Below, in pieces: positions 5,491 to 38,619 of a stretch of 64,000 nt of DNA (the first letter of the stretch is position 1; each line of letters begins with the position of its first letter). The notes under the pieces are model-generated. The model was not told where the DNA came from, did no database searches, and saw only the letters and a program-made list of their open reading frames with translations. Source of the stretch: Macrostomum lignano. Lineage: Eukaryota. The position numbers and the translations under genes were made by a program. The stretch spans positions 46,893 through 110,892 of the forward strand of contig NIVC01003213.1 of assembly GCA_002269645.1 (NCBI GenBank), in the 5' to 3' direction.

Positions 5491-5524
<34 letters not shown>

Positions 5525-5553
5525 CGCAGAAAGACAGACGGACAGGCAAACAT

Positions 5554-5603
<50 letters not shown>

Positions 5604-5625
5604 CGCAGAAAGACAGACGGACAGG

Positions 5626-5678
<53 letters not shown>

Positions 5679-18039: not shown

Positions 18040-21000
18040 TCAAACAGCATTGGAAGCCCGGCTGCTCAGCTTGTGCCCGGACGAGCTGCTGCTGTTCATC
18101 TCGCGGGTGACGCTGATCGACCTGATGACGGTTCCGCCGCTGCCGCCGCTGCGCACCGACATTGTGCGCTCGGCCACTTCGGCTCGGTGCTCGGCTTCTT
18201 CGGCCACCTGCTGCGCTTTGCGGTACTTGCTGATGGCCGCGGCAGAGGCCTCCTCCTGGAAGTTCCAGGTGGATATTCCAGCGAGTTAGGATGGTTTTGC
18301 TATTGAATATTCTTTTACTGGAACATGCTTGAACTGCCTGACAACTGAAAGCAACGCTTCCTGTTGTCAGTTTCCTGCCTCTGACACGGAACTCCTGACA
18401 CTTATGTTGGCACTTTCCTGCCTCTGACACGGAACTCCTGGCACCTTATGTTGTCAGTTTCCTGCCTCTGACACGGAACTCCTGACACTTATGTTGGCAC
18501 TTTCCTGCCTCTGACACGGAACTCCTGGCACCTTATGTTGGCACTTTCCTGCCTCTGACACACGGAACTCCTGGCACCTTATGTTGGCACTTTCCTGCCT
18601 CTGACACACGGAACTCCTGGCACCTTATGTTGGCACTTTCCTGCCTCTGACACGGAACTCCTGGCACCTTATGTTGGCACTTTCCTGCCTCTGACACAAT
18701 TTTGCGCTTTCCTGACGTTTCATTTCGACGCTTAATGTTAGTTTTTACTGACGCTTCCGCGTCTGATGCTAACATTCCTGACATTGACACGCTATTCCCG
18801 CTTTTTACATCGTACAGGCGCTTTTCTGGCACGAATGCTGTTTATTTTCTTTAGTTCTAAAGGTACCCCCTTTTCTGGAGCCAATCAGTCGCCCAACCCA
18901 CACTTACCGACTCTTCCACCTGCCGTTTGTAAGCCTTGATCTTAAGCTGCGCCTTGCCCAATAGGTCGTGCAGCTCAATGTTAACCAGCCGCTCCTCCTC
19001 AGCTTGGGCGAGGGCCTCCTTAACCTGGCGTTCCAATTTCTTAACGACCGCCTGGAACTCGCGAGCCCGTCGCTGTTCAGCTTCGAGCTCAGCCTCGAGC
19101 TCCCGGACTCGCTCCTGCAGTCGCTGGGCGATGCGTTTGCTCTCGCGCGAGGCTAGCGACTCCGACTCTTCGAGTTTGACCGTCACTTCTCGAATTTCAA
19201 TCTTTTTGGTAGGGGAAGGGGGTTAGTTTTCGTGAGTATGACGCATTAACTCTTGGATTCTGAAGTTTTTCTGAATTACATTCCAGAAACGTCGTTAGAC
19301 GAAATCTAACATCCGCCTTTTACCCACTCGTCCATTTTTGGCCTCCGGCTTGCTTCTGGTTTTCAAATATGTCATTAAAAACGAATACACGGATGCCAGT
19401 TGGATATGCGTATGAGAATGCTTTATGCGGGATCGGATTGGGAGCTGATGACTCAACTATAGTATACTCGGCCTTTGAAAAAAAATCCTTTCCCCTTTCA
19501 GAAGAAGCAATACTTGATTTCTAGAAGAACCAGATCACTGCTTCCAAAAGAAACACATTGCTTTTTACGAGTAAAAGAATGAAGAGAGCTCCCTTCGTGA
19601 GCAACTCCGTGAGCGTTCTTCTAAGGGGGATTCATAGAAAGGATTCCATCAGAAGAGTATCCTTTGCCAATCTTATCGGAGTTGCTTCTGAAAGCAGTCT
19701 ATTTTTCTAGAAGCTGTGTTTCTTCTCGAAGCAAACGATTTTCCGCGCACCTCCAGCTGGCGCCGCAGCCCCTCGGCCACCCGGTAGTTCTCCTGCTCGG
19801 CCCGCAACTCGTCGGCCAGGCGTTGCACCTCTCCAGCGAGCCGGTTGGCCCGGTCCAGTTCGGCAGCCCGGCCGCTCTGAGCGTCCTCCAGCTCGGACCT
19901 GAGCGAGGCCAGCTCGCCTTCCAGCCGGCGCCTCTCGTTGCCAGACGTCTGCAGCTGCATGGTCAGCTCGCTGATGCGAACGCTGACGTCCTGCAGCTCG
20001 GATTCGGCCTTCTTCCGGCCGCGCTCGGCGGTCTCGCAGATTGTGCGAAGCTCATTGAGCTCCGACTGGAGCGCCGAACGACGCTTCTCGCTGGCCGAGA
20101 GCGCGCCCTGGGACACCTCGTTGGCTCGTCGCTCATCCTCTAGCAGAGCCTCCAGCTCCTGAATGCGCGTCAGCAGGGTCTTGTTCTCCTTGGCCAGGTT
20201 CTGCGATTATGTGTTGAGAATGGTAAAGTGCACCTGAGTAGTTTCTTGGTAACCACGCGTCCAGCACAGTTCCTGTAGAACTTAACATCCCCTCGCCGCA
20301 ACTAACAAATCAGAACAAAATCAGAACAAGAAGTATCACATAAGTAATAATGATAATTGATTACGTCTGCTTTAATGTTCAACCGACAGCTCAGCCGCAG
20401 CTATTGCGTGGCGCATCTAAAGGCTGCATACGGCTGTTCAGTCCAAGGACTGGTGGGTCTCCACACCCACCTTCAATTACCTCAGCTAATGCTGGCATTA
20501 AGTGTCTTGCTCAAGGACTTAAATTGTTCTAAGTGGGTCGAAAATCGAATTTCCAAGCTTTCAGTCGTGAGTCCGACGCTCTACCCACAAGACTAAAACC
20601 CCATCAACTCAATGTGTTGAAGAAATCATAGGTGCTTGATCGTATAAGATTTTGTTGCTAGTTACCAACCTGGTTGGCACGATTGGCCACGTCAATCTGG
20701 GACTCCAAGTCCAGCACGGTAGATTCCAGGTGCTTCTTCAGCCTGTTAACCTCCGATTTGTGCTTCGCATCCGAGTCGTTCAACGCCGCCTGCAGCTCCT
20801 CAACAGTGCGCTGGCTGCTCCGCCGGAGACTCTCCAGTTCGGACTCCTTCTCGGCCAGGCGAGTCTCCAGATCCGAGCGCAGGCGGGCGAGGGCATCGGC
20901 GGTGGCCGCCTGCTTCTGCGTCAGCTCGCGCACAGCATCCTCGGCGTCGCGCAGAGAGCTGGCGAACGAGTCTCGTGCCGCTTCGGCCTCGGCTCTGGCC

Positions 21001-24000
21001 GCGTCGGAGTCGGCCAGGCGTCTGGTCAGGTCGCGATTGGCCGAGTTGGCCTCCTTGAGGCTGCCGGCCAGCTGGGCATTGTCCCGCTCCAGCTGGGCGA
21101 TGCGGTCGTCTGCCGATTTCAACGATTTGCGCAGCTTGGCCAGCTCGGCTTGTTGAGACTGCAGAGTGGCTTGCAGCAAAGCGCTCTCGGAGGTGAGCTC
21201 CTCGATTCGCACCGTCAACTGGCTCACCGTGGCCTCCGACTGTTTCACCTGGGAGGCCAGCTCAGCGTTGGCGGCCTGCGTGTTTTTTGGAGAATCGACA
21301 AGTTTTAGTGACAGTTTAGAACATCAACGATTTCAATAATCCACGTAAGCTAACCTGTAGCGCGTCCGTGTCTCCCTGCAAGGCCTTGAGCTCGGCTAGC
21401 AGCTGCTGACGCGACCTGTCCATGTTGTTCGCCCGGCTGCGCTCGCGCTCGGCGACGTCTTCCAGCTCGGTGACTTTCACCGTCAGCTTGCGCCTGCGAG
21501 GTGCAGGGAAATTTCGTAGCACTCAAGTCAAAGTCAAGTTGAAGGGCTACTAGTCTAGGACAACTGGAAGCTGGACAAGTTGAAAACAAACTCACTTGAC
21601 TTCCTCGAACTCTTCCACTCGGCTAACAAAGTCCCTCTCGTACTTTGAACGTAGGGTGGTCAACTCGGAGTTGAGTTTGTTGATTTGCACCCTCAACGAA
21701 GCGGCCTCTTCACTTTCTTCGTCGTATTTGGACTGCAGATTGTAATACTCCTGCTGCAGCGTCATAAACTGCGTTTGCAGGTTGCTTCGCGACTGGAAAT
21801 CGAATTTTAGTAGGGCTCCGTTTACTACTAAAGTGGTAATCGTAACAAGCCGAAGAGATTCTTACTATGAGCTAAGTAGTTCTTCATTTTGTCTCTAGAA
21901 TTTTAATAAAATCACTATAAATAAGCTACTCGCTCAGGATGCCTTAAGCTTAAAGAATAATTGACGCAAGCAGCGTCTTTAGCGGCAGACTAACCGAAGT
22001 CAAATAGCTTAACCTTGCGGTGAATAATGTCGGAGTTCGTCTACTAATAAGTAGAAAGTATAGAGTATAGAAAACAAGTCAGTCGACCCGCAGTCAGATA
22101 GGAGTCATGTCAAGCAGTATAGGGATAGAGATGTACCTAGGGATGGTCGAATTCGTGTGGAAATCGAACCCAGGTAAACTCACTCGAGATTCCTCATCCA
22201 GCGTCTTCTTCATCTCTTCGAGCTGGGCCTGCAGCAACGACCTGGCCTTGGACAGTCCGGACACCTGCGACTCGGCGTCGTGAGCAGCTCGCAGCAGTTG
22301 GCTGTTCTCGGCCTGCAGCCGGCTCTGGGACTCTTGCATTGAGCGAAGCTGCCCAACCAGCTCGTCGTTTTGAGCACGAAGCCGAGACAGTTGAGCATCG
22401 TAGCCTTCCAGCTTGGATTCCACGGTGTTCTGGGTTGGGGGTGAAGGTAATTAGGCTGCCTGAATGAGGCATTCACCAATGTGCATTAACGTCCATCCGT
22501 GCATCTAATCTGAACCTTATCTTGGCATATATATTCCATCTTGTCTATTCAAGTCTTTGTCATGCCCATTTGTCTGCCAATCTTGTCCATCCTGTCCTCC
22601 CGTCACTCCATCCTGTCCACTCGTCACTCCATCCTGTCCACTCGTCACTCCATCCTGTCCACTCGTCACTCCATCCTGTCCACTCGTCACTCCATCCTGT
22701 CCACTCGTCACTCCATCCTGTCCAACTGTCACTCCATCCTGTCCACTCGTCACTCGATCCTGTCCATCCAGTCTCACCTTGGCCTTGATAGCCTGGTCCA
22801 GCTGTCCGCCCAGGTTGTCCAGCTCGCCCAGCAACGCCGTCTTCTCCTTCTCAAGACGAGTCTTCAATTTTCTCAGACTGTCAACCTCGTCATTGAGCTC
22901 GGCAATATTGACGGTGTACTTCTTCTTGATGCTGACCTCGAGAGACTCCAACTGGGCGTTCGCGGCTTCGAGTTCTTTGCGAACTTTTTGCAGATCAAGC
23001 TCGCGACGTCGCACAGCCTCCTGAGCTTGAGAGGCGATGTTGTCGGCCTCTTCGATTCGTTCGTTAGCAGATTCCAGCTGGAAGTTGTACTCGTTGATCA
23101 CTCGCTCGGACTGAAAGGTGAAAAAAATAATATTCATATTACGAGCTTTGAATGCTGCTCGCAGATCAGGTTCAAAAAACAAATACGGTTCTGAAGTTTC
23201 TTACCCGAACCCTCGCGTCGCGCTCAAATTGGAGCAAATCCTCCAGCTCCTTGATCCTCGTCTGCGGTGGCGGTGTTGGGCGTTCAATTTTGCAGAATAA
23301 GAAGTTAATCCTTTTGTCTTAAGGGTGTTGACACTTTGACCTACTGGTCACTCTTTTTGCACGCCACTAGCTCCACTACTATTCTTGTTGGTACCCTAAC
23401 GATCACAGAGTTCGTCACTGTAATAGTTCTATTTGTCACTCTACTAGTTGCTATATTCGTCACTCTACTAGTTACTATATTCGTCACTACTAGTTACTCT
23501 ACTCGTCACTCTACTAGTTACTCGATTCGTCACTCTACTAGTTACTCGATTCGTCACTCTACTAGTTACTCGATTCGTCACTCTACTAGTTGTTCTATTC
23601 GTCACTCTACTAGTTACTCGATTCGTTACTCTACTAGTTACTCGATTCGTCACTCTACTAGTTACTCTATCCGTCACTCTACTAGTTATTCTATTCGTCA
23701 ATCTATTAGTTACTCGATTCGTCACTCTACTAGTTGTTCTATTCGTCACTCTACTAGTTACTCGATTCGTCACTCTACTAGTTGTTCTATTCGTCACTCT
23801 ACTAGTTACTCGATTCGTCACTCTACTAGTTGTTCTATTCGTCACTCTACTAGTTACTCGATTCGTTACTCTACTAGTTACTCGATTCGTCACTCTACTA
23901 GTTACTCTATCCGTCACTCTACTAGTTATTCTATTCGTCAATCTATTAGTTACTCTATTCGTCAGTTTATTCGTCACCCACGCATTAAAACCAGTATTGC

Positions 24001-24145
24001 GAGTTTTACAGTTAGGAAATGTACCACCAAGAATTACCTCCAGTCTCGACTGGCTGTTGGGCGACAGTCCCCTGTACACCTGTCGAGACAGTGTTGTGGT
24101 GCTGGACTCCATCCTGGAGCTCCTACTGCCGCCTCCGGAACTCAT
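18040..24145 (-). CDS. Prm: Paramyosin, full length, 881 aa; exons 24145-24038, 23261-23205, 23110-22778, 22429-22184, 21792-21596, 21493-21355, 21275-20670, 20200-19751, 19201-18908, 18255-18040
   Basis: All nine introns GT-AG; spliced length 2646 nt in frame. N-terminus [36 protein letters not shown] and C-terminus KYRKAQQVAEEAEHRAEVAERT match flatworm paramyosin (e.g. schistosome Sm97). Coiled-coil rod throughout; no motor domain. Confidence 0.96.
18355..18697. repeat. 44-46-bp minisatellite in the last paramyosin intron
   Basis: About 7 copies of GGCACTTTCCTGCCTCTGACACGGAACTCCTGGCACCTTATGTT. Confidence 0.93.
22588..22770. repeat. 21-bp minisatellite (CACTCGTCACTCCATCCTGTC) next to the paramyosin exon-3 donor
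   Basis: About 8 copies. Confidence 0.93.
23400..23975. repeat. 24-bp minisatellite (ATTCGTCACTCTACTAGTTACTCG), paramyosin intron 1
   Basis: About 23 copies; yields the RVTS/HSTSYSIR ORFs. Confidence 0.95.
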
Positions 24146-26831
24146 CGTGATCTCAGTAGTTCTACGGTCGGGTAGAGCACAATTAATTTTTAAAAAAGAG
24201 TATCAGAAAAACGAAAAGGATCTGCAGAAAAGAGACGAAACAAAAAATGGTTGCGAAAAAACTGCTAGCCTTAAAAAAACCTGCGCTGGACGTTCTTCGT
24301 TTTTAGCCACCAGACCGTGTCCGCAGTTAACTAGCCACGCCATCTGGCCCCTCACTCTTCCCTCAGACTTAGGGGAGCTGAAGCCATCGGATTCCAACCC
24401 ATATTTCTTTCGTTCTATACTTTCTAACCTTCCGCGCGAGCCAACCGAGCCGTGCAGCAGAAGGCCAGGCGAAAAATTCAAATGTTCCAACAACCGAACC
24501 ACTGCTACATCGGTTCCGCCTGCCTTACCTGCGAGCTGTTCCATTCCATTAGCCAGTGTACTCGGTCTTACTGCCCAATTCTCCTCCTTCCCCTCACTCC
24601 CCCCCCTAACTTCCTTCACTTTCGGCCGAGTCGGAGCGGGTCGCGGTAGGCGTAGGGAAGGTTCGGCATTGATTTTTGCTGCCCTGTAGGCTTCCTCTGT
24701 ACAGCATAGTGCACTGCCCTGGCTTTGTCAATTGGTTTCACCTGCATATCTCATTATGAGCTTCCGCGCTAGTTATGACGGAAACTTGGTGGCGGATATA
24801 AAAGTACAAATACACGCAATTTAATGATAGGCCTTATAAAGCTAAGGAAACTTTTCTAGATTAACTGATTTAAAACCAAGAAACTTTAAAATACTTTTTT
24901 TCACGCATGCAGCACGATATCGACTCACTTTTCAACTTTTGACCGACTCATGACAGTCCTTTCCTATCGGATGCTCTCTTTTGTTCTCTTTGTGTCGAGA
25001 CGAAATTGGGGAAAACTAATTGAGGCTGAACTTTAATTGGCACGTCAGCTGTTTTCCGATAAAAATACGATTGCAATTCTTTCTTAGAAAGGAAGAAAAA
25101 GGTGATTCCACTTAAACTATTGAGTATCGTTAACTTTCTTTATGCTGTGGTTTATACCGGAAAAACTCAGACAAAAGCTCCAGAGATGGATCCAGTCAGC
25201 AATTGAACGCGGTTCAGAGGATCAGATGGAGCTGCAGGCTCTAAGGGCACCGAATCTATGCGTAGGGGAGTCGAGGGGGCCGCAGCTGCGATCAATCCAT
25301 TTATACACCTTTACCATTGTACACCGAATCACCAGCGGTGCTATGAGGGGCTGTGCAGGCACACATTTTGCCCGAAGGAGTTTTGCCGAATCATCCATTG
25401 ACGCAAAAGGTCAGTGCGTATGCCGCTCCCTTCCTCTCCGCTTCTGTGCCTCTCTGTCCGTCTACTTCACTTTCTACCGCTGCAAATCTCTCCCAAAAAA
25501 TTCGTTCCGTTCTTTTAGACGACGCGTTTCAGTGCTAGCATGATTTTCCAAGCCCCCGGTAAAGGGGTTGGTGGCAGCGTCGGCTGCAGCTTACATGATG
25601 GAGCGCAGAAATTTTAAAGCCGCCTGTACACGTCCCTGTCCTAGGGGTATTAAATCTTTCTATCGCCTCCAGATAGAATGTTGGGCTGTATATAATTTCA
25701 CTGCACCATTAAATTCCCTATTCAAACTGCCGTGATTCTGAATGACGCATGAAGAAGTTCAAATATCGAAAATATAATTTTCTATACTATATTTTATTTT
25801 AACACTTAGTGATCAACTTTGGTTCTGATTTTTGAGAACTACAACATTATAAGCAACAAGAAAAAGTTAAAATACTATAGCTAGGTTTGGCAAGTTCAAA
25901 GATTTTGTAGTTCTTAAGGTGCAGGATGTCGCAAATCACATTCTGTATTTCTATCAAAGCTCAAGGCTGCTACCCTATATTACACTAGGGTAAAACTGCA
26001 GGAATTCTGTGAATTCTTGGCCTTGTTTGCTTTGCCATATAGACACTTTATATATGTAGCTATTTTATGTTTTTATGGTTTAGGTAGGCTATAATACTAT
26101 CAATACGGTTTGTTAATATTGTATTAACATTTTTGCAATTTTTTTAGCTTAATACTAAGTTTACTTGCTTAAACTACAGTATATTCTAGACTTGAAAACA
26201 CTTAATGATGTGCTAACAACATAAAGCTAACACCTTCTGGACCACCGGATCTCCCTGCGCGACACCGCAGCACCAGCTGCGACGCCTCCCCGCTGTATTA
26301 GGATGCCTGGACCCCTGCAGTTAGGTCAAGTAAGTCAACATTAAGCTACATAATGTAGAGCTTATAAAGAGACCAAAATAGGACAGTTACATTTTCAGCC
26401 TATACTAGTTTATGCAGTACTTTCGCTCCTTCAAGTCTGATTCTATTTTTAGCGCCTGTGCCTCAGCCGTCTCATTTTTAACTCGGAGTTTCCAAGTAAA
26501 AGCGCAGCGTGCATAGCGGTCCGTTCTTGCAGAGCAGTGGAGTCAATAGTACGCTAGGTGGACAGTGGAACCAGAGCCAACTCCAGCAAACTCGTACCCC
26601 GTAGCCCATACCTGTTACTAAAAATAGCTCGTACACCATTAGTCATCCTATGGCCTGGAGTGCCTGGTATTAGCTCGTGCTGCGCCCAATGAATTGATAT
26701 TACCAAACTTTATCGTGCTGATGTGTGCTTCGTTTGAAAAGTAAAAACCAGCGCTGTAAAGCGGTGATTGGTCAATAGATTTCTACAAAGCGCCTCAACG
26801 CGATAAATTTAGTAACAAACTTAGGAAAGTC

Positions 26832-26863
<32 letters not shown>

Positions 26864-26904
26864 CATGATCTTACCCACCATTGACGGCTAAAGAGATTTC
26901 TGAG

Positions 26905-28732
26905 ATGCAGGCGTTCGGCCCCGTAATGGGATTTTTGGCCGATCTGGCCAGTCCACAGCGTCAGCACCTGCAAAAGGTCTGGCAGCAGCAGAAGAGCCTC
27001 GAGAAAGCTCCCTCTGGAAGAAGGCGAAGAGGCAAGCAGAATGCAGCCAGCGGCAGCAAACCAACTCAGCAAAGCGATGCCACTAACAAATTAAGCGGCG
27101 AAAGATCCCCGAAAGAACCGGAGTGCCTGAAAAATTGGGAATGCATGCCGGCAAATGGACGGGAGCTGTTTGTAGTGCACTTCACGCGAGCTGAAGCGAT
27201 GAACGATGCGGCTAAACAGTCAATCTACACAGTTAAGTCCAGAACGAATGCAAACGAGCTGAATCGACTCAGCAGACTCATCGAGGAGCGGGTTGACCAC
27301 GAGATGCTGGCTATTGAAGAGTGTCGCGAGATAATGCGGTCCAACCAGTTGCCCTCTGGCTATCGCTTTCAAGGCAGCGTCCGCGAGGTTTGGGGCTTCC
27401 AGGACACGTCCGACATCGACTTGGTGCTGACTAAGAAGCGTCCAGCCGGACTGGAAGTCATAAATATTGTGCCCGGTTTCTGTCAGCTGACGCGGCCATC
27501 CATGGTAGCCAAAATCTACAGGCGGAAAGGCAAGTCCGAACTGTTCCGTCGTGGACGTCGCTTCACCGACGCGAGCGCCACTTCTAAAGTACTCAGTCCG
27601 GGCAAGTTTCGCAAGAAATTTAGCGATTGGCGATTGGCGAATAGTAACGCGCTGTTGTCGCAGGGCAAGCTCGAGCCCGGGACCCGGTCGCGAATTCACG
27701 AGCACGGGCCGGCCGTGACGCATGACTACTGCTTCATCGTGGGTGGACGCGAGGAACACCGAGAGGTTGACTTTGTCTGCACCATAGCGCTGAAGTGAGT
27801 GATTTCTTGATTTGACCATATTCAAATATACATGTACGAGGATTGGAGCCTCTTGGTAATCTTGGTACCTCGCTTGTCAGCCATCAAACATAAAATATGA
27901 ATACGTTTGCAGGAACCGGCCGTGGCTGCTGAAAGAGTGGGTCATCCGACAGACCACCAGCCCTCTTGGCATCAGCAAGCGAGTGGGAAGCGCTCCGATC
28001 CACATAGTTCCCATTGGTGCGTACAAAGGCCGAAGCAAGCAGTACTCGCATACCTGGCGCTACTCATACAACGAAATCGAGTGCCGACTAATTGAAGAGC
28101 TCTCGCCAAAGCTCGGAGCCGGCTACGCTCTGCTGAAGAAGGTCTGCCATCGCTACCTAAAGCCGGCGGGTTTCAAGTCCTACCATGCCAAGACCTGCTA
28201 CCTGTGGCTTCTGTTGCAATCGGAACACGAGCAGCTGTCACTGCTGCAGCTTGTCGAATCAACCATCGAGCTGCTCATGACATGCGCAGCCAACGGCTTC
28301 ATTCCGAACTACTTCATGCCGAGCGAGAACATTCTTCGCGAGACAATCTCGTCCAAGCAGGTGAACAGAGCGGCCATATCGACCTACTTGGAAAACTTCG
28401 CCGAGTCGGGAGAACGAATCACCGACCTGACTGTAGCCAGGCTGAGCAGCTACTTTGAGCAGCTGTCGACTGATATCAAGCTGACGCCGCTGCCAAGTTT
28501 GCTGAACTGGAGCGACAGCTGCCTGTGCCGGTTCAGCGACGTTCCAGACCGGCAATACAGCTGCGACTCGGACGAGGAACTGGCGTTGGACAGCAGTTCG
28601 AATCAGCAGTGCCAGGAGAGGGCCAAGAAGCAGTGCGTGAACTGCGACAGTCTGATACAGTACGAGTTAAAGAAGTCTGCTCCGCTCCACTTGATTGTGC
28701 GGTTTATTCCTTTTTTCGTCGGGAAAAATTAA
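26905..28732 (+). CDS. Mab-21/cGAS-like nucleotidyltransferase (cGLR candidate), ~569 aa; exons 26905-27794 and 27913-28732
   Basis: NTase signature FQGSVREVWGFQDTSDIDLVL, then HGPAVT...EVDFVCTI. A phase-2 GT-AG intron (27795-27912) joins to RPWLLKEWVIR...IHIVPIG...WRYSYNEIECRL...YALLKKV...FKSYHAKTCYLW...FIPNYFMPSENIL, the Mab-21 helical lobe motifs. The start is uncertain; upstream exons are possible. Confidence 0.85.
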
Positions 28733-30566
28733 GTTCAGAGCCAGCGACTGTTGGTTATTGGATGACCACAGATTCTGCGCGGTTACTCAAAGCTCTGAGA
28801 CCGACTTACATGTAACTTGTAAATAATCGCTAATAACCGTATCTCATCGAGAATTTCACGCTTTATCTTTATCAAATCCTACAGATGCATATTTGTATAT
28901 TTTGATTTTTGCGGGAGACAGGGGGCATTCCCCTCCGCCAGTAAAAGCTGACGGGGTATGCCAAGCCCTGTCTTTTTGGATTAAGATACTGGTTCATTAA
29001 CCAGTTCACTCTGCGGTGAGCCAAATCATCACTCCCCATTTTTGTGAGCTCACACTTTTCAGTGTGAATTAAACATTAAAATCATGTTTTCTGCTGTAAT
29101 TTTATCTGCTTTTTAAAGTTATTTATTATTATACCTGTGGTTTATTTATTTTCTGCAAGCGACGGTGAAGTGCGTCTTCTGTCATATTTTAGAGAACACA
29201 TTTTTTGCGCTAATATTTATTGCTACACGCTTTTGGTAAAGATTACGTATTTTTATTACGGAAGCGAAATAGTACGCTAAAGTCAATTGAGATTGATGTA
29301 CATTTCATTTTTGTCTTAATGCATGTTGTAATTTAATTTAAAGATTTTAGAAATCACCTAAATTCCGAATGTAGCTACTTATTATCGTGGTAGTAGTAGC
29401 ATCGAAGTAAATATTCATCCTCGTCGTATTTATTATACTCGAATTCCAGCGAGCTTCAGATACTAGCAGCTGTTATTTTTGTTGAAATGCCGGCAATTTT
29501 ACTCTTTTTTTTGAAAGGATTTCTAGAATTTTAAGGGAAAATCATGTCTACTCATAGTACTATAGGAAGATAAAGCCTTAAGAGTAAGGTGAGTAAGGTG
29601 GCTTATTCAACGTATTTTTCATTTCAATATTCGCGTCGTACCTTAAATAAAACGTACTAAGAAACAAACTTGCGCACTGGAAGTGGTTTTGTTGTCAGAA
29701 AAACGAGACTCTTTTTTCATGCATATTTTACTTTGCCAGTCTAGCCGCTTGTATTGCCTGTGGTCTCTCTCTCTCTCTCTCTGCGCTCTCTTGCGCATAT
29801 ACCCCCTCTGCTGGTTAAATCTTTTGACAATAATTTCGCAGCATTGTTTCCTTGTGTTTTATTCTCTGGTTGCCCCCGGCAGGCTGGCAGTCAGTCAGCT
29901 CTTGCTTGCTTATACCATTTGATTTGAGCTGAACTGCTCTCTTATGCATGCTCAAACCGAACCTCTTTACCTAGCTCAAATGTTCACAATTGTATATACC
30001 CTGCCCTCTACCCCCCTCTCTCTCTGCCTTTAAAATGCATCGTCAATCTCGTCGTTGACTAAGTTTTTAGGCTGCTTGTGGCACGCATTGCGATGGCATT
30101 GCGCACACGAGTCTGGTGCGTGCCCGAGGGGGGGGGGTTGGTTCGCTGAGCCTGAGCATTAAGTATTGCTCAGTCATAGAAGGCGGCTGCAAAAGAAAGA
30201 AGCGAAAAAAATAGCATTTAAAACAAGCCTCAGGGCAGGGAGGGAGAGACTGCGTCGGAGAAGCATTGAGTTCCGAATGCTTAATTCTAAGGCTTGAAGG
30301 AAACTGCTTGAACTACCGGCAACATTGAAGCTTAATGTAAGTGGCTTATGTGCATGAACATAATCTTTGGATAAAGATGTCTATCACATAACAAATCGTA
30401 AGTTAGTTTAAGCCACTGCTATGAGCGGAAAATTATAGTTCAATACTTCAAAACAACCTTGCACAGATCGTTGGTAAGTCTTCAAAAACCAAAAGAAGAA
30501 TCATAACATAATGAGCAGTGTTCACGCATTTCAGCGCCTATCGCAGTCCAACAGCGCGCATCCGTC

Positions 30567-33500
30567 ATGGGACTTGGCGGCAGCAGAGAGCAGACGCCAG
30601 GCGAGAGCACATCCGACGTCCTCTATTGGGCGGCCTATTTCGGCCGGCTAGAAGAACTTCGACAGATGCTGGCGGCTGGCGCGGATGTCAACGAGCGCGA
30701 GAGCGAATTCCGTAGGACGCCGCTGATAGCCACGGCGTTCAAGGATCGCTGGGAGGCGGCGCTGCTGCTGCTGGAGAAGGGCGCTCAAGTTGAGGCGCGA
30801 GAAGATTCTCTCGGCTGTACGGCCCTGATGATTGCGGCGCAGTACAACTCGATTGGAGTGGCTCAGGTAAGAGGGGGACGGGAGCCGTAGCCTTGTGTGC
30901 TATAGCGCGGCGTTCTTACGTGCCAGCGGCCCAGGCTCGATTCCAAGCGCAGTCGCATTAACTTGGGGCTAAATTGGAATCTCGGCTTGGCTCTTCTCGT
31001 GCAATTAATGGCCTTGAGGACTAACGATAAATACAGTAAGGGCCGCTGTACACTCCTGCGTGGGTGTGTGCCTGTGCGCATGACTGCGTACGTATCCGCG
31101 GAATGAGTCGGTGGAATGGGCAGCAATGCCTCTTGCCGGTTGTGTAACAATGTCGCTTTAAGTGCGCCCAAGTGCACACAGACCCCTGCCTCCAATAAAA
31201 AGGAGACGAAGGCCGTATGAATTAATGGACGCAAAAATAATTGCTATAAAATATACGAAGAATCTTACACTCGTAGAAAAATCCAATAAGGTTTAAATAA
31301 CAATCTACAGGTGCTCCTTGAGGCCAGGGCAAACCCGGACGTCGGCAACGAGCAGCACGGCCAAACTGCCCTGATGTGGTGCTGCCAGTACGACCACGCC
31401 GAGATGGCCAGCCTCCTGCTGACGCGAGGGGCCAACGTGTCGATGCAACGCCGAGACACCGTCACGCCGCTGATGATCACTGCCAAGAACAACGCCTACT
31501 CCGTTGCCGCTCTGCTGCTAGACAACGGAGCCGACCCGAACGCCGCCGGCAATGGCCAGTTCACCGCCCTGATGATCTGCGGCATGGTTGACAGCCTCGA
31601 GGTGGCGCAGCTGCTTCTGCGTCACGGCGCGAACAAAGCGGCCACCAATAGGGACGGCAAGACGGCTTTAATATTGTGCATCGAGAATGCCAGCTACAGG
31701 GTGGCCCAGCTCCTACTCGAAGCCGGTGAGTTTTTAACGATAGCTACGAGCTACTGAGCTTGATGGCGAAAACATACGGGCGTACTCTCTTTAATAGTTG
31801 AATTTAGCTCTACGTTTTTAAATCCTACGCAAACCATCACACAGGAGCCGATCCGAACGCCGTCTGTCAGGACAATGGCCATTCAGCCGCAACTTTGGCC
31901 GCTCTGAAAGGCCACTTAGATCTACTCCGACTGCTGATTGAATTTTCGGCCAACCGACTTCACAGGTGCGCAGATGGGCGCGGCTTGGTGGAACTGGCTA
32001 GCGCAAGCGAAAGCCAGACTACCGTGCAGTACGTGCGGCATCTGCTGCTGCTCGAGCAGTCACAGCAGCAGCAAGAGATCGTGCAGCAAAACTGGCAGCA
32101 GTCACAGCAGCAGCAAGAGATCGTGCAGCAAAACTGGCAGCAGTCACAGCAGCAACAACAACAACAGCAGCAGCAGCAGCAGCAAGAGGGTGCGCAGCAA
32201 AGCTGGCAGCAAGAGGTTGTGCAGCAAAGCTGGCAGCAAGAGGTTGTGCAGCAAAGCTGGCAGCAAGAGTGGCAGCAGACACAGCAGCATGAAATAAATC
32301 AGACGCAGGAGCAGGAACTGCTGGAGCAACAGCGCATGGAGCAGGAACTGCTGGAGCAGCAGCGCAAGGAGCAGGAACTGCTGGAGCAGCAGCGCATGGA
32401 GCAGGAACTGCTGGAGCAGCAGCGCAATGAGCAGGAACTGCTGGAGCAGCAGCGCAAGGAGGAGGAACTGCTGGAGCAGCAGCGCAATGAGCAGGAACTG
32501 CTGGAGCAGCAGCGCAAGGAGGAGGAACTGCTGGAGCAGCAGCGCATGGAGCAGGAACTGCTGGAGCAGCAGCGCAAGGAGCAGGAACTGCTGGAGCAGC
32601 AGCGCAAGGAGGAGGAACTGCTGGAGCAGCAGCGCAAGGAGCAGGAACTGCTGGAGCAGCAGCGCAAGGAGCAGGAACTGCTGGAGCAGCAGCGCAATGA
32701 GCAGGAACTGCTGGAGCAGCAGCGCAAGGAGCAGGAACTGCTGGAGCAGCAGCGCAAGGAGCAGGAACTGCTGGAGCAACAGCGCAAGGAGCAGGAACTG
32801 CTGGAGCAGCAGCGCATGGAGCAGGAACTGCTGGTGCCACAGAACGATTTTGCACAACAGCAACAGCAAGATTGGAGCTGGGAGTCGCAGCAAGAGAGTT
32901 TGCCGCAGCAATTCGAGGTTGAAGAGGCTTCATTTACGTAAGCGTACACGCAGATAACGTGCTACTCAGTTAATCTAAATATACTAAATCTCTAAGGTTT
33001 GTATGCTTGAATTTCATTACTATTGAGGTAAAAAGTGTACCGACAATTTCAGTCAAAGCCACACACAAGCCGAGAAACAGGCAGTAGCATCATCGCGCAC
33101 GCTGGACTCCAAGACAGACAGAGCGGAAGGCGTTGAGACAGCCGGCGTAGCAAGGTTAGACCGTAAAAATTGCATTGAAAGTTGCTTAGATTAACCACTG
33201 AATCTTACAATGTTTTATTACTGATTTAGCATCGCCATTGATGAGAATTCTATGTCAGCCTGGGCGTCGCTGATGGACGAAGCCGAGCCAGCAGCTGGCC
33301 TAGAGCTTCCGATTGTGGCGCAGCACACGGATCCAGAGGGTCCCGGCACCGAGGTGTCGCTGGCGAAGCAACTGCAAGAACAGCCGAAAGGCACTGCCGA
33401 AGAACCGACAAGCGGTCAAGAAGCCACTTTTCTGGCCATGATGGAGGAAGATGCTAACCTGGCCGATTGGGAGAAGCTGGCACAGTCGGGAGCAGAACTG

Positions 33501-35005
33501 CCGGAGCAGCTCGGAGACGTTGAGGAGGAGGTGACGGCAGTCAACGTGCGGCCGCTAGGTCCTGACACTGGTGTGTCTTTCGAACAACAGCTGCTTGACG
33601 ATCAGAAACGAGAAGAGAAGGTGACCGCCAGGTAAAGCACTATTCTTCTGTGATATACATGCACAGATGTACATATTCTGCCCTTCAATAGAGTTCGATA
33701 GGAACAGCAGTAAAAATTCAGTGAAACCTACCATAAACAATGGAGTCAGGACCACACTTAGCTTACAAGGATCTCACCAATTGCAAAATTTCTACAGTTC
33801 AATGGAAGGAAAGACAGCAGAAGCCCCACAGACTCCTGTTGAACTGCCCGTTGAGGAAGTGGTGACAGCCACTTACGTGCGACCGTTAGGTCCCGACACG
33901 GGCGTCTCATTCGAACAGCAAATGCTAGACGATCAGAAACGAGAGGAGGAAAAGGCTGACAAAAGGTTTGAATTTTTATTGATTTCGCTTCGACTACTTG
34001 ATTTTTCCTGGGATAGAACTCAAGATCCAATCCGATAAAGTCAATGGGCCAACCCATACCAAGTGGCTAGTCACTCTTTGAAAAATTTTCAAGTTTTTGC
34101 GATATGTATAATAAGCGAAAAAACGCCACTTGGACCCATGAGCAAAGTGACTTAAAGTCAACCTCTCCCCACGCTCCAAACAGTGTAATCACGCTACAAA
34201 CATGCATTGATTCATCGTCAGCAATAAATGACACCATAATTTCAGTTTGATGGAGGGAGCGGCAGCCACTGCAGAGCAACAGCCAATCGAGGAGGAGGTG
34301 ACAGCCGTTCACGTAGAGCCGCTTGGCCCCGACACAGGTGTTCCGTTTGAGCAGCAACTGGCGGACGATCAGAAGCAAGAAGCGTCCGTTGAGCAGTCAA
34401 CGGTAGAAGCATCTTCGGTTGAGCAGTCAACGGTAGAAGCATCTTCGGTTGAGCAGTCAACGGTAGTAGCATCTTCGGTTGAGCAGTCGGTTGAGTCAAC
34501 GGTGGAAGCATCTGCTGAAATGTCCTCTGAGCAAGCTGTTCAGGAGGCTAACAATGCTAACGAGGAGGACTCGGAGGCGGAGGTGGAGGAGACAATATCG
34601 GCGACCACCGCTAGTGAGAGCACTACAAGCGCTGCTGCAGGCTCTTTAACATCCAGCAAAAGCGCTCGGCGGCGTCAAAAGAAGCAACAGAAAATGCAGC
34701 AACAGCTGCAGGTGCAACAGCAAGCTGAGCAGCAGGTTCAAAGGCAGGATTCATCCAACCAGTCAAGCACCAGCCAGACAACGTCTAGCACGAAGAAGTT
34801 CGTGAACAAGAAGCGAATTGTAACAAGAAAGCTGATCACAACTGAGAAAACCGGCGAACAGGTGAACAAGCGCGAGGTGATAGTGAAAATCTGCATCGCA
34901 AGCGGAGACTTCAGCGAGTCTGTGGGCCAAACCGAAGGCCCCGAGCAGACAATTAAATGGAAAAGCCAACGAGAGACCGAATCTCAGTTTCAGAAAAACT
35001 TTTAA
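30567..35005 (+). CDS. Ankyrin-repeat protein with Q-rich, decad-repeat and acidic repeat regions, ~1079 aa; exons 30567-30866, 31311-31725, 31845-32937, 33053-33154, 33230-33631, 33798-33965, 34246-35005
   Basis: 8-9 ANK repeats (TPLIATA, TALMIAA, TALMWCC, TPLMITA, TALMICG, TALILCI...GADPN). Six GT-AG introns give 3240 nt in frame. The 3' end is less certain. Confidence 0.8.
32309..32835 (+). repeat. Coding 30-bp tandem repeat: 17 copies of E[Q/E]ELLEQQR[K/M/N]
   Basis: Counted from the translation of exon 3 of the ankyrin gene. Confidence 0.95.
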
Positions 35006-35598
35006 CTATAGGCTCTGAGCTACGAGCCAGTAGATTATTTCAACGGGAAAGGCGTTTTTGTGTGTTGAATTTACTGTCAAAAATGGTACTTAAGGTACGT
35101 TTTGATTCGTATGTTTTTTCCGCTAAAAATGATTACAAATTGTTACTACAGTTGATTTTGCGGTTTCAGTGTGACTATTTTTTACCTGCTAGCCATCAAA
35201 ACAGCTTGATCTTGTTTGTTTTTGTTACCCTAAAAGTTTCATTAAAAGTACTTAGTAAGATCAATCATCCACCCTTTTTTAAACTCAAAATGTGTTAGTA
35301 CAATGGAATGAAATCCAGCTCAGTTAGTAACTAACTATATAAAAATAAATGTTCAAATAGTTTTCAATGTTCACAGTTTAACAAGCACCACAAAAGCCAT
35401 GAACAACTACACGATGTGCGCTCATTTTTGTAATTCATTTAATGAAATAATGAGTTAATATATAAATTGCTCTACCAGTAAAGTAGATCCGTGCATCCGT
35501 GCAAAATAGCAACGCCAACACACATAATACATCGAATTGGGAAACAATAAATTGCAACAAAAATCACCAGTGGAAAAAGTGTATATTAACAACAGCCT

Positions 35599-37679
35599 CT
35601 ATAATTTGGTTTGATTAGTTTTAGCAACTTTGGTAGCAGTTCCATTCAGTACTGTTTTAGTAGTAGTACTACTATTAGTAGTAGTCGTGGAATTAACCAC
35701 AGCATCGAGTCGTCTTGCTTGAGTATCGTTGCCAGCGGCGGTTTTGTCGGAGTTCCGACGCTCCCGATGTCGGTCAACAGCATTGGCGGCTTCCAACCGT
35801 TTGAGCTGCTCTTCGATTCGACGACCCTGCTCACGCTGCTCGCGAAGCAGACTTGCCAGCACTTCCAGGTCGCTCTTATTCGAACTTTTTCTGGCCTGAT
35901 GTTTCATGGAACCTGTCGAGTTCGTAGCCGTCTTAAATTCCAATTTTGCAGTCGGTTTTACTGTCGAAGATTTGTGCGTCGGTGCCAATTTTGACGGTGC
36001 TATTTCTGTCGTTTTCAAAGTCACACTAGGAGTTGTTGGTTCAAGTGTAGTAGTTTTAGTGAATAGCAGTTTCTTTTGCAGTTTTTCCTTCATTGGATTT
36101 CGTCCCTTGATTCCAACAACTTCCCGAGCCAAAACAGGCAGCGGAGGCTCCTGACGACTTTCGGAGTCTGCCGGATTGCGATACAACGAATAACGATAGA
36201 AAATATTGATAAAATGCTTAACTAGCCTACTGAATAGAATAGTGTAAGTAGTGTAATCCGCTTCAGTGTAAAATGTTTATTTACCGTCAAGTTTACGATC
36301 CTGTTTGATTAGTACAGTCGGAGAAGCGGGAGTGTAGTCGGGGTGAGACAGGCGGGCAACAGTCGATCCGATGGAAGCTGGATAGCTGTCGCGATGGGGC
36401 AGCTGCGGGGGCGGCTGGTTTTGAACTGGCGCGTGGCTCTCGCCGCCTCCGCCAGGTCCAAACAGAGTAGCAACTGTGCCAATGCACAGCGTGGCCACAC
36501 CAAGCCATTTAATCACGCAGCCAATTGAGCAGCAACGCGCCCTGACTCCGCTGAATGTGTTCAAGTAGATGCCGGCTGGCAGGATATAGCAGATCACCGA
36601 GCCTGTCACTGAGCCAGTCAGGCTTAAAATAAACTCAACTGGAGTAGGCGGGTCAAGGATTGACCAATCAGAGTTGCAGAGCTTGTCCTGGCCAACCAGG
36701 AGTCACAGACACCGTCTACCCCTCCCAGACCCTGTTTACCCCCACCAAGACCCTGTCTACCCCCACCAAGACCCTGTCTACCCCCACCAAGACCCTGTCT
36801 ACCCCCACCAAGACCCTGTCTACCCCCACCAAGACCCTGTCTACCCCCCACCAAGACCCTGTCTACCCCCACCCAGACCCTGTCTACCCCACCCAGATCC
36901 TGTCTACCCCTCCCAGACCGTGTCTACCCCTCCCAGACACTATCTAACCCCTCCCAGACCCTACCTAACCCCTCCCAGACCCCATCTAACCCCTCTTAGA
37001 CACTATCTAACTCCTCCCAGACCCTATCTAACCCCTCTTAGACACTATCTAACTCCTCCCAGACCCTATCTAACCCTTCTAAGACACCTCCCAGACCCTG
37101 TCCACTCCTCCCAGATCCTGTCTAACCCCTTCCAGACACTATCTAACCCCTCCCAGACCCTATCTAACCCCTCTTAGACCCTACCTAACTCCTCCCAGAC
37201 CCTATCTAACCCCTCTTAGACCCTACCTAACTCCTCCCAGACCCTATCTAACCCCTCTTAGACACTATCTAACTCCTCCCAGACCCTATCTAACCCCTCT
37301 TAGACACTATCTAACTCCTCCCAGACCCTATCTAACCCTTCCAAGACACCTCCCAGACCCTGTCCACTCCTCCCAGATCCTGTCTAACCCCTTCCAGACC
37401 CTGTCTACCCCTCCCAGACACTGTCTACCCCTCCCAGACACTGTCTACCCCTCCCAGACACTGTCTACCCCTCCTAGACCAAATTTGGCACTACCGCAGA
37501 CCCTTAAGAACTGTCAGTGCACAGCACAAAACAAAAAACACACCATTTGGAATTAGCAGACCTCCAACAAGCGTGCCCAGCACAATGGCCAAAGTTATGC
37601 CGCGAAATTTCCCATCAGGAATGAACACCCGGCCTGTGGTGAGGTCGCCGCCTCCGCCGCTACCGCCAGTCCGATGTTG
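35599..37679 (-). CDS. SLC38A10: SLC38A10-like amino-acid transporter, 3' three exons only (37679-37544, 36638-36285, 36167-35599)
   Basis: Spliced translation GRVFIPDGKFRGITLAIVLGTLVGGLLIPN|VEFILSLTGSVTGSVICYILPAGIY resembles SLC38A10 ([47 protein letters not shown]). A long low-complexity C-terminal tail follows, typical of A10. Both introns are phase 1. Upstream exons not found. Confidence 0.85.
36715..37460. repeat. 21-bp C-rich minisatellite family in an SLC38A10 intron
   Basis: Units ACCCTGTCTACCCCCACCAAG grading into CCCTATCTAACCCCTCTTAGA / CACTATCTAACTCCTCCCAGA. Confidence 0.93.
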
Positions 37680-37784
37680 CTATGGAAACGGATATTAATG
37701 AAGCAACTCAGTAGTACGTGAAGTGCGCGTTAAACTCAAATTTTTAAAAAGGTCAACAGTCAATCTAAGATAAATCAGTCTATA

Positions 37785-38045
37785 AATCACCTGAGATGTC
37801 AATCAAGGTCAATCAGTCTAAAATACATGAGATGTCAATCTAAGTCAATCAAACTACAAAACACCTGAGATGTCGATCAAGTCAATCAAACTACAAAACA
37901 CCTGAGATGTCGATTAAGTCAATCAAACTACAAAACACCTGAGATGTCGATTAAGTCAATCAAACTACAAAACACCTGAGATGTCGATCAAGTCAATCAA
38001 ACTACAAAACACCTGAGATGTCAATCAAGGTCAATCAAACTAAAG
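37785..38045. repeat. ~38-bp minisatellite (ACACCTGAGATGTCGATYAAGTCAATCAAACTACAAA)
   Basis: About 6 copies. Confidence 0.9.
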
Positions 38046-38619
38046 AACATGCAATGTCAATCACCTCTGCAAAGACAAAAATGAAGACAAAAGTACACAA
38101 AAGTAATTTTTAGAATACGAAAAATTGCAAGAAAGCCAATTCAGCAAAACGTTGCTTGTCAGCAGACCAACATTAGCAAGAACGAACATTGTTAATGATT
38201 GGAGCATCAGACACACGCAAACGGGATGAAAAGCGCTGAGGCTGGCACTAAGCAACTCTTTGATGTCGAACCGAAGCAAAAGAAGAATAAAAGACGGTAA
38301 AGGCGGGATTAATCCCAGACTGAAGCAATTTGAAGGTGCTCAGAACACCTGAGCACAGGTGATCGTCAGCCGCTTTTTATGTCAGAGTGTTTCTTCGCCT
38401 AAAATTTTCTTTCGCGGAAAAAAAGATTTGAGGCCAAGACAGACAGGGGTAAACTGCTAGTGAGTTTTTCTGCTCGAACCAGATGAGGGAAGGGTGCGAG
38501 CAGGCGTGATGCTGAATCACATCTGTATTTAATAAACCTTGCTGCTCAAATTTGTTGCACAAATGAGAGCTGGATGTTAACAGTGAGTTTTGAAACTGAT
38601 GCAGGAATGGTGAGTAGAG

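What the first reader, a model, noticed from the sequence alone, without database searches (positions are those of the whole stretch)
26905..28732. cGAS-like receptor (cGLR) candidate with an intact catalytic triad
Seen: GS-x11-D-I-D (GAC codons at 27412 and 27418), a third acidic residue in EVDFV (27769), and after splicing the full set of Mab-21 motifs (EW.R, H.VP.G, WR.S, SYH.KT, FIPNYF.P..N.L). Established: this fold and triad define cGAS/cGLR cyclic-dinucleotide synthases, whereas the developmental MAB21L proteins have degenerate active sites. Inference: an active nucleotide second-messenger synthase in a probable flatworm, whose ligand and product are unknown. The gene is split across two ORFs in the track and is easily missed.
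Basis: partly seen in the sequence, partly recalled or inferred. Interest (0 to 1): 0.72.

Follow-up and report, generated by a model that had tools for sequence, protein, structure and literature searches.

The report
Orphan cGAS-like enzyme gene in Macrostomum
This is a real, already annotated two-exon gene of the flatworm Macrostomum lignano that encodes a very divergent cGAS-like receptor (an enzyme type that makes nucleotide alarm signals) with all known catalytic residues in place; its activity, trigger, product and receptor are untested.

Summary
Exon 1 (26905-27794), a 118-nt GT-AG intron and exon 2 (27913-28732) give a 569-aa protein. It is 100% identical to GenBank BOX15_Mlig007181g1 of Macrostomum lignano, whose annotation was built from transcripts.

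Both Mab-21 Pfam domains pass their cut-offs. The AlphaFold2 core model (pLDDT 80, pTM 0.82) matches cGAS and human MB21D2 in Foldseek (E about 1e-13).

The active-site residues are all present:
- FQGS(155-158), then 11 residues, then D170-I-D172, the same spacing as human cGAS.
- V-D289-F lines up with cGAS D319.
- The donor-site residues E353, K372/373, Y387 and K390 are conserved.

The protein is an orphan. Apart from one faulty model of a second M. lignano copy, its best relatives among 1.84 billion representative proteins are at most about 30% identical. They are invertebrate cGLRs and include the proven 2'3'-cGAMP synthase Sp-cGLR2. It does not group with MAB21L, MB21D2, cGAS or the five M. 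lignano cGLRs already screened by Li et al. 2023.

So it is a new, unscreened member of a known family, not a new kind of system. Whether M. lignano has STING could not be settled here.

The parts
26905..27794 (+). Exon 1 coding part (aa 1-296 plus two bases of codon 297). It holds a disordered basic N-terminus (aa 1-95), the spine helix (aa ~96-136), the GS loop, the D-I-D dyad, a basic N-lobe segment, GPAVT and the third Asp.
   Evidence: ORF and translation; identical to GenBank model BOX15_Mlig007181g1; secondary structure from AF2
27795..27912 (+). Intron, 118 nt, GTGAGT...TTTGCAG. An in-frame TGA at 27796-27798 ends the unspliced ORF.
   Evidence: Sequence. The same intron is in the transcript-derived GenBank annotation.
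27913..28732 (+). Exon 2 coding part (last base of codon 297 to the TAA stop). It holds the rest of the NTase core, the Mab-21_C helix bundle, and an acidic Cys-containing C-terminal tail (aa 451-569).
27367..27378 (+). F155-Q156-G157-S158, the h[QT]GS activation-loop motif.
   Evidence: Sequence. It aligns without gaps to human cGAS TGSYYE...NEFDVMF, and the family consensus is GSxxEG. The loop has low confidence in both models.
27412..27420 (+). D170-I171-D172, the metal-binding dyad (cGAS E225/D227 equivalent).
   Evidence: Invariant in A1 and >=90% conserved in A3. hhalign places SDIDLVL on NEFDVMF. It sits at the start of strand 171-177.
27706..27720 (+). G268-P-A-V-T272, the conserved GPAxT strand before the third acidic residue.
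   Evidence: G268/P269 nearly invariant; aligns to cGAS SPAVT
27766..27774 (+). V288-D289-F290, the third catalytic carboxylate (cGAS D319 equivalent).
   Evidence: Invariant in 39/39 and 121/121 aligned relatives. hhalign probability 99.4% puts EVDFV on SVDIT.
28055..28081 (+). W345-R346-Y-S348 ... E353, matching cGAS W375-R376-x-S378 and E383. E383 is a donor-nucleotide-binding residue.
   Evidence: Nearly invariant or invariant columns; alignment to cGAS; role of E383 in PMC4897736
28178..28195 (+). S386-Y387-H388-A-K390-T391, matching cGAS SYHVKT. Y436 stacks on the donor base and K439 positions ATP.
28298..28330 (+). F426-I-P-N-Y430-F-M-P-S-E-N436, the C-lobe signature LPNYFIPxxNL of Mab-21 proteins.

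Best explanation
The gene encodes a divergent member of the animal cGAS-like receptor (cGLR / Mab-21) family of nucleotidyltransferases, restricted to its lineage and with a complete active site.

Shown here:
- A transcribed two-exon gene.
- A bilobed cGAS-like fold: spine helix, N-lobe beta-sheet and C-lobe helix bundle.
- The h[QT]GS loop, the D170-x-D172 dyad and D289 in the positions of cGAS G212/S213, E225/D227 and D319.
- Conserved donor-nucleotide residues E353, K372/373, Y387 and K390.
- A basic core (pI 9.65) with a very basic N-lobe segment (aa 174-262, pI 11.6).
- No zinc thumb.

Inferred, by analogy with cGAS, Drosophila cGLR1 and the cGLRs characterised by Li et al. 2023:
- In the resting state the GS loop is not set for catalysis.
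- A ligand, most likely a long double-stranded nucleic acid or another still unknown PAMP, binds the basic face opposite the active site and reorders the loop.
- The enzyme then joins two NTPs into a cyclic dinucleotide. 2'3'-cGAMP is the commonest cGLR product.
- The product activates a downstream receptor, which would be STING if M. lignano has one.

Ligand, product and receptor are unknown. The confidence figure is for the whole statement, including the inferred activity. Family membership alone I put at about 0.9.
For: Gene and transcript:
- Identical to GenBank BOX15_Mlig007181g1, an annotation built from RNA-seq assemblies.

Family:
- Pfam Mab-21 and Mab-21_C are both above their cut-offs.
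- No hit to bacterial CD-NTase or defence models.

Fold:
- The AF2 core model has pLDDT 80.1 and pTM 0.82.
- Foldseek top hits are all cGAS (E 2e-13 to 2e-14, TM up to 0.71 on the target), plus MB21D2 7LT1.

Active site:
- D170, D172, D289 and E353 are invariant or nearly invariant among 39 and 121 aligned relatives.
- D289 aligns to cGAS D319 at 99.4% probability.
- D-I-D aligns to E-F-D of cGAS.
- GS-x11-D is the same spacing as in cGAS (sequence).
- The donor-site residues listed in PMC4897736 are conserved.

Relatives and charge:
- Relatives include a biochemically proven 2'3'-cGAMP synthase, Sp-cGLR2 (= P0038; 28% identity over 160 aa, pairwise E 7e-15).
- The core is basic.

The organism keeps cGLRs and other antiviral genes:
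- Five M. lignano cGLRs were in the Li et al. screen.
- It has at least six Mx genes.
Against: - No biochemical data exist.
- The N-lobe is so divergent that phmmer and Pfam align only aa ~226-451. The separate N-lobe profile alignment is weak on its own (E 0.019).
- MAFFT placed the family GS on G152/Y153 rather than G157/S158.
- The GS loop has pLDDT <50 in both models.
- An intact triad does not prove activity.
  - Human MB21D2 has it, yet no ligand or product is defined for it and it did not respond to a wide panel of known PAMPs.
  - None of the five screened M. lignano cGLRs is marked active.
- cGAS and STING are reported lost in other flatworms. STING in M. lignano could not be found or excluded here.
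- The protein is a long orphan branch.
Confidence: 0.55

Rival explanations
1. It is an orphan Mab-21 protein that keeps a catalytic-looking site but is not a ligand-activated cyclic-dinucleotide synthase in immunity. It would resemble human MB21D2 or the MAB21L proteins, acting through protein or nucleotide binding or some unrelated role.
For: - The best solved-structure sequence match is MB21D2 (E 1.3e-8).
- It shares the G[GS]VRE loop start with MB21D2 and exactly the same 114-residue spacing between the dyad and the third Asp.
- MB21D2 has the full triad, but no ligand or product is defined for it.
- The screened M. lignano cGLRs are not marked active.
- STING is absent from other flatworms.
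Against: - There is no supported grouping with MB21D2 or MAB21L. NJ distances are 2.22 and 3.0, against 1.56-1.68 to invertebrate cGLRs, and bootstraps are <=3%.
- About 150 representatives score better than MB21D2 does, among them the active Sp-cGLR2.
- Unlike MAB21L1 (Q169), the third carboxylate is present.
- All donor-site residues are kept.
Confidence: 0.27
2. It is an active nucleotidyltransferase with different chemistry: linear 2'-5' or 3'-5' oligonucleotides as made by OAS, a cyclic tri- or oligonucleotide, or nucleotidylation of another acceptor. Its signal would go to a receptor other than STING.
For: - The Pol-beta-type triad and donor site are generic to cGAS, OAS and CD-NTases.
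- Acceptor-site residues could not be assigned.
- cGLRs are known to make varied products, including pyrimidine-containing ones.
- STING was not found.
Against: - Every characterised member of the Mab-21/cGLR branch with activity makes a cyclic dinucleotide.
- The fold matches are to cGAS and MB21D2, not OAS.
- There is no hit to bacterial CD-NTase models.
Confidence: 0.1
3. It is a decaying, lineage-specific duplicate whose conserved motifs are only residual. M. lignano is a recent polyploid with much redundancy.
For: - It has a very long branch and no orthologue outside M. lignano.
- The only close copy (P0002) differs by two stretches that read as frameshifts, and it lacks the third Asp region (note).
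- The assembly is highly redundant.
Against: - This copy has an intact 569-codon frame, a canonical intron and a transcript-derived annotation.
- All ~15 family-invariant residues are retained, which is unlikely under neutral drift at this divergence.
- The P0002 defects may be indel errors of an older long-read assembly.
Confidence: 0.05

Closest known systems
Animal cGAS-like receptors as defined by Li et al. 2023 (PMC9980059); closest characterised relative is Stylophora pistillata Sp-cGLR2 (XP_022802921.1 = P0038), a 2'3'-cGAMP synthase with unknown ligand
   Same: - Mab-21 NTase core plus helix bundle.
- GS loop, D-h-D dyad, third Asp, WRxS, SYHxKT and PNYF motifs.
- A long (~110-residue) spacer in the N-lobe.
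- No zinc thumb.
- 28% identity over 160 aa.
   Different: - Only the region from the third Asp to the C-lobe is recognisably alike.
- The N-lobe is highly divergent.
- Sp-cGLR2 and its kin carry long C-terminal helical/TPR-like extensions, while this protein has a short acidic Cys-containing tail.
- No activity data exist for this protein.
Human MB21D2 (C3orf59; PDB 7LT1), an orphan cGLR
   Same: - Best sequence match among solved structures (E 1.3e-8).
- Intact G[GS] / D-h-D / D triad.
- Identical 114-residue spacing between the dyad and the third Asp.
- Similar 'G[GS]VRE' loop start.
- Foldseek E 6e-12.
   Different: - Not an orthologue. About 150 other representatives score higher.
- NJ distance is 2.22 with no bootstrap support.
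- GS-to-dyad spacing is 11 residues here against about 21 in MB21D2.
cGAS (human, mouse, pig)
   Same: - Top structural matches (E ~1e-13 to 1e-14).
- Gapless match of GS-x11-[DE]h[DE].
- D289 corresponds to D319.
- Donor-site residues E383, K414, Y436 and K439 are conserved.
   Different: - About 15-19% identity.
- No zinc-thumb insertion (H390-C405 region).
- A different N-terminal extension.
- A longer N-lobe spacer (114 against 89).
MAB21L1/MAB21L2 (developmental Mab-21 proteins; PDB 5EOG)
   Same: The same Pfam domains and fold family.
   Different: - MAB21L1 lacks the GS motif and has Q169 in place of the third Asp.
- No phmmer match to 5EOG at E<=1.
- It has the largest distance in the tree, 3.0.
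The five M. lignano cGLRs screened by Li et al. 2023 (PAA86972, PAA45980, PAA57558, PAA93208, PAA68676)
   Same: - The same species and the same family.
- A shared 'GSxxExWG' form of the activation loop.
   Different: - Only 22-28% identity, confined to the C-lobe.
- NJ distances of 2.3-2.9 for the three that entered the tree.
- This is a separate lineage that was not in the screen.

Membership tests
Animal cGLR (criteria of Li et al. 2023, PMC9980059) | h[QT]GS activation-loop motif | tested here: met
   F155-Q156-G157-S158. It matches the family consensus GSxxEG and cGAS TGSYYE. Caveat: MAFFT put the family GS on G152/Y153, and the loop has low model confidence.
Animal cGLR (criteria of Li et al. 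2023, PMC9980059) | [DE]h[DE]h dyad 8-20 residues after GS | tested here: met
   D170-I-D172-L lies 11 residues after S158, as in human cGAS. The columns are invariant or >=90% conserved.
Animal cGLR (criteria of Li et al. 2023, PMC9980059) | Third acidic residue in h[DE]h, aligned with cGAS D319 | tested here: met
   V288-D289-F290. It is invariant in 121/121 relatives, and hhalign gives 99.4% to cGAS SVDIT.
Animal cGLR (criteria of Li et al. 2023, PMC9980059) | Spacing of 50-90 residues between the dyad and the third acidic residue | tested here: inconclusive
   The spacing here is 114, outside the printed window. Human MB21D2, which the same authors count as a cGLR, also has 114. The median in 111 relatives is 110, and human cGAS has 89. 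The window therefore does not discriminate membership.
Animal cGLR (criteria of Li et al. 2023, PMC9980059) | [quoted passage not shown] | tested here: met
   Pfam Mab-21 (aa 226-358) and Mab-21_C (aa 380-451) are both above their cut-offs. N-lobe homology rests on motifs, a weak profile match and the fold.
Animal cGLR (criteria of Li et al. 2023, PMC9980059) | AlphaFold2-predicted structural homology to cGAS/cGLR enzymes | tested here: met
   The core model has pLDDT 80.1 and pTM 0.82. The top 50 Foldseek hits are cGAS and MB21D2, covering ~380-400 columns.
Animal cGLR (functional definition) | Ligand-activated synthesis of a nucleotide second messenger | not testable with these tools
   This needs recombinant enzyme assays. 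No published data were found for Mlig007181.
Animal cGLR (functional definition) | A cognate receptor (STING) in the same genome | tested here: inconclusive
   Two word-indexed protein searches, with human and hemichordate STING, returned only deuterostome proteins. M. lignano is absent from Li et al. Table S5. STING is reported lost in Schistosoma and Schmidtea.
MB21D2 orthologue group | Specific (reciprocal or phylogenetic) grouping with MB21D2 | tested here: not met
   MB21D2 scores 37 bits, while ~150 representatives score higher, up to 67 bits. NJ distance is 2.22 with no supported clade.
MAB21L1/2 developmental proteins | MAB21L-type sequence: no GS, and Q at the third triad position | tested here: not met
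   GS and D289 are present. There is no phmmer hit to 5EOG, and the distance of 3.0 is the largest in the tree.
Bacterial-type CD-NTase (CBASS) acquired by transfer | Match to CD-NTase/defence HMMs | tested here: not met
   No PADLOC or NCBIfam hit at E<=1.

The most novel reading that the evidence does not exclude
This orphan cGLR sits in a phylum widely described as having lost cGAS-STING. It could sense a ligand other than dsDNA or dsRNA through its unusually basic N-lobe segment or its Cys-containing acidic tail. It could also make a non-standard nucleotide signal read by a receptor other than STING. Either would reveal a flatworm-specific branch of nucleotide second-messenger immunity.
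Probability: 0.12. Interest if true: 0.65.

Novelty: new member of a known kind. Interest (0 to 1): 0.33.

Why it matters
Flatworms are usually cited as a phylum that lost cGAS and STING. That view rests on Schistosoma and Schmidtea, and on the statement that 'most platyhelminthes' lack cGLRs.

Macrostomum lignano branches early, is a transgenic and RNAi-tractable model, and is the known exception. This gene adds a further, very divergent cGLR lineage that was not among the five enzymes screened so far.

If active, it would offer a tractable system for asking what cGLRs sense and signal to in a lophotrochozoan. It would also test whether a STING-independent read-out exists.

As it stands, this is an incremental addition to a family of more than 3,000 catalogued members.

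Tried and rejected
- **STING in M. lignano.** Both returned only deuterostome proteins, because the word index limits sensitivity. The question stays open.
- **Membership in Li et al.'s Table S1.** Three peptides of this protein were not found in the held supplements. Table S1 is truncated in the held copy, so this proves nothing.
- **Phylogeny.** An NJ tree of 156 sequences over 184 columns with 200 bootstraps gave no supported placement (<=3%). I use only the distances and the negative result.
- **N-lobe profile alignment to cGAS.** It is weak on its own (E 0.019), so it is used only together with the motif spacing and the fold.
- **Second-copy comparison and dN/dS.** No contig encoding P0002 is on record.
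- **Literature on Mlig007181.** Nothing in the main texts, and nothing in the three held supplementary files of the genome paper.
- **Spacing of 114 residues.** I first took it as a reason why the published motif screen might have missed the gene. I rejected that after finding MB21D2 has the same 114 and the relatives' median is 110.
- **Antisense ORFs.** 27220-27825 (-) and 28259-28555 (-) have no Pfam match and no ATG start, so I treat them as chance.
- **Weak TCAD2 hit.** E 0.057, below its cut-off, so dismissed.
- **Direct superposition of the three carboxylates on the cGAS metal site.** Not possible, because model coordinates are not exposed.
Full report
**1. Observation**

- An ATG at 26905 opens a frame that runs to 27794.
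- The next bases are GTGAGT, and an in-frame TGA at 27796-27798 ends the unspliced ORF.
- TTTGCAG ends at 27912, and from 27913 the frame continues to TAA at 28730-28732.
- Removing the 118-nt intron gives a 1710-nt CDS of 569 codons.
- The GAC codons at 27412, 27418 and 27769 encode D170, D172 and D289.
- G157-S158 lie 11 residues upstream of D170.

**2. Identity of the locus**

- The spliced product is 100% identical over its full length to GenBank 'hypothetical protein BOX15_Mlig007181g1 [Macrostomum lignano]'. UniRef calls it 'Mab-21 domain-containing protein'.
- The DNA is 100% identical to contig NIVC01002973.1 of assembly GCA_002269645.1, where the same two-exon gene is called.
- That annotation was derived entirely from RNA-seq transcript assemblies: StringTie/TACO plus a de novo assembly, with ORFs by TransDecoder (PMC5730564).
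- So a spliced transcript with this intron exists. The 'flatworm' guess is right, and the gene has not been overlooked by annotators.

**3. Family**

- Pfam Mab-21 (PF03281, aa 226-358, E 1.5e-7) and Mab-21_C (PF20266, aa 380-451, E 2.3e-6) both exceed their gathering scores.
- No bacterial CD-NTase or defence model matches.
- Against PDB sequences the best match is human MB21D2 (7LT1, E 1.3e-8). Next come cGAS (5.6e-3) and a cGLR1 (0.011). MAB21L1 and MiD51 do not match.

**4. Relatives**

- An exhaustive HMMER scan of 1.84 billion representative proteins found 263 matches at E<=1e-3. Only one is close: P0002, another M. lignano model.
- P0002 differs from this protein by two stretches that equal the +1 frame of this DNA, and it lacks the GPAVT...EVDFV region. 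It is either an indel-ridden older assembly or a decaying copy (note).
- All other matches are at most about 30% identical and align only from aa ~260 to 450.
- The named ones come from the mussel Sinanodonta woodiana ('Cyclic GMP-AMP synthase', 'Mab-21-like HhH/H2TH-like domain-containing protein').
- One hit, P0038 (28% identity over 160 aa, pairwise E 7e-15), is Stylophora pistillata XP_022802921.1, which is Sp-cGLR2. It is active enzyme '04' of Li et al. 2023, a 2'3'-cGAMP synthase with an unknown ligand.

**5. Active site**

- In alignments with 38 and with 120 relatives, D170, D172, D289 and E353 are invariant or >=90% conserved. So are G268-P269, W345-R346, K372, Y387, K390, Y430 and N436.
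- Profile-profile alignment to human cGAS (probability 99.4%) puts EVD289FV on SVD319IT, WRYS on WRLS, E353 on E383 and SYHAKT on SYHVKT.
- A separate N-lobe alignment puts SD170ID172LVL on NE225FD227VMF. That alignment is weak on its own.
- Ours (QGSVREVWGFQDTSDIDLVL) and cGAS (TGSYYEHVKISAPNEFDVMF) align without a gap.
- MAFFT placed the family GS on G152/Y153, but 'GSVRE' fits the family 'GSxxE', so I read G157/S158 as the motif.
- The donor-nucleotide residues that PMC4897736 lists for cGAS (E383, K414, Y436, K439) are all conserved.
- The cGAS zinc thumb is absent.

**6. Structure**

- The full-length AF2 model was mediocre (pLDDT 62), with a good core.
- A second model of aa 90-470, built with 121 sequences, reached pLDDT 80.1 and pTM 0.82.
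- It shows a long spine helix, an N-lobe sheet carrying D170/D172 and D289 on adjacent predicted strands, and a C-lobe helix bundle.
- The GS loop has low confidence in both models.
For the second model it returned cGAS plus MB21D2.
- Coordinates are not exposed, so I could not measure the carboxylate geometry.

**7. Placement within the family**

- In an NJ analysis of 156 sequences over 184 reliably aligned columns, the protein is a long branch with no supported partner (bootstrap <=3%).
- Its corrected distances are:
  - 1.56-1.68 to the nearest invertebrate cGLRs
  - 2.19 to human cGAS
  - 2.22 to MB21D2
  - 3.0 to MAB21L1
  - 2.3-2.9 to three of the other M. lignano cGLRs
- It does share two details with MB21D2: a 'G[GS]VRE' loop start and exactly 114 residues between the dyad and the third Asp.
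- The 114-residue spacing lies outside the 'X50-90' printed in Li et al.'s motif. MB21D2 has the same value and the relatives' median is 110, so that window is not discriminating.

**8. What is already known**

- Li et al. 2023 (PMC9980059) catalogued 3,020 cGLRs. They stated that nematodes and 'most platyhelminthes' have none apart from Mab21-like proteins.
- Their 140-enzyme screen included five M. lignano proteins. None of them is this one. All five are only 22-28% identical to it over the C-lobe, and none carries an 'active' label.
- I could not determine whether this protein is in their Table S1, because the held copy is truncated.
- cGAS and STING are reported lost in Schistosoma (PMC4117786) and Schmidtea (PMC13563047).
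- M. lignano retains other antiviral genes, such as at least six Mx genes (PMC11789081).
- An intact triad is still not proof of activity. MB21D2 has it, yet its ligand and product remain undefined.

**9. Mechanism**

- Shown: a transcribed gene for a cGAS-fold nucleotidyltransferase with a complete set of catalytic and donor-site residues. The core is basic (pI 9.65). The N-lobe segment aa 174-262 is very basic (pI 11.6). The N-terminus is disordered and basic. The C-terminal tail is acidic (pI 4.8) and holds six cysteines.
- Inferred, by analogy with characterised cGLRs: ligand binding on the basic face reorders the GS loop, two NTPs are cyclised, and the product activates a receptor.
- Ligand, product and receptor are unknown.
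- Two STING searches returned only deuterostome proteins and settle nothing.

**10. Surroundings**

- No immune-type neighbour was seen.
- The flanks hold MFS-transporter exons, coiled-coil exons, a 1060-aa Q/E-rich gene, an amino-acid transporter gene, many micro- and minisatellites, and a 23-bp satellite of at least 23 kb.
- The antisense ORFs over the gene have no family match.

**11. Verdict**

- The interpretation 'cGLR candidate with intact triad' is supported. 'Active' is unproven, and 'easily missed' is wrong.
- This is a new, unscreened and very divergent member of a known family, in the one flatworm already known to keep cGLRs.
- Interest is modest.

Noticed in passing
window 40948-64000: A 23-bp satellite (ATCGCCCCCAAACCTCAGTAAGA) of about 1,024 copies at 97% matches. 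It runs off the end of the window and has extreme, constant GC and AT skew.
   Followed up: partly
window 1500-2800, 4700-5800, 11810-12368, 22541-23024, 23336-24175, 36706-37480, 38612-39261, 39783-40370: Many micro- and minisatellite arrays (CTGT-type, and 26-, 43- and 63/262-bp units). They create long spurious ORFs in several frames, such as 'CLSVCLSV...'.
   Followed up: partly
P0002 (UniRef A0A1I8F3Z9) compared with window 27440-27720: The only close relative is a second M. lignano gene model. Its two deviating stretches (WTGSHKYCAR and PGPGREFTSTGRP) equal the +1 reading frame of this window's DNA, and it lacks the third catalytic Asp region. It is either indel errors of an older assembly or a frameshifted paralogue.
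   Followed up: partly
window ~30558-35281 (+) (from L001 6635-11358): The downstream neighbour is an annotated 1060-aa gene with no Pfam family. It has a long Q/E-rich 'EQELLEQQRK' repeat (ORF 31895-32941) and an N-terminal stretch that looks ankyrin-like by eye.
   Followed up: partly
window 7361-7951 (-), 9135-9686 (-); 20658-21248 (-), 22517-23182 (-); ~35875-38732 (-): Other neighbours are exons of an MFS transporter (PF07690), exons of a coiled-coil or myosin-tail-like protein, and an Aa_trans amino-acid transporter gene. None is immune-related.
   Followed up: partly
window 26833-26865: A (GA)n/GATA microsatellite lies directly upstream of the start codon of the cGLR gene.
   Followed up: no
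aa 500-541 of the protein (window ~28520-28645): Six cysteines (C500, C502, C514, C530, C538, C541) sit in the acidic, low-confidence C-terminal tail. This might be a small metal-binding module. No family match was found.
   Followed up: no
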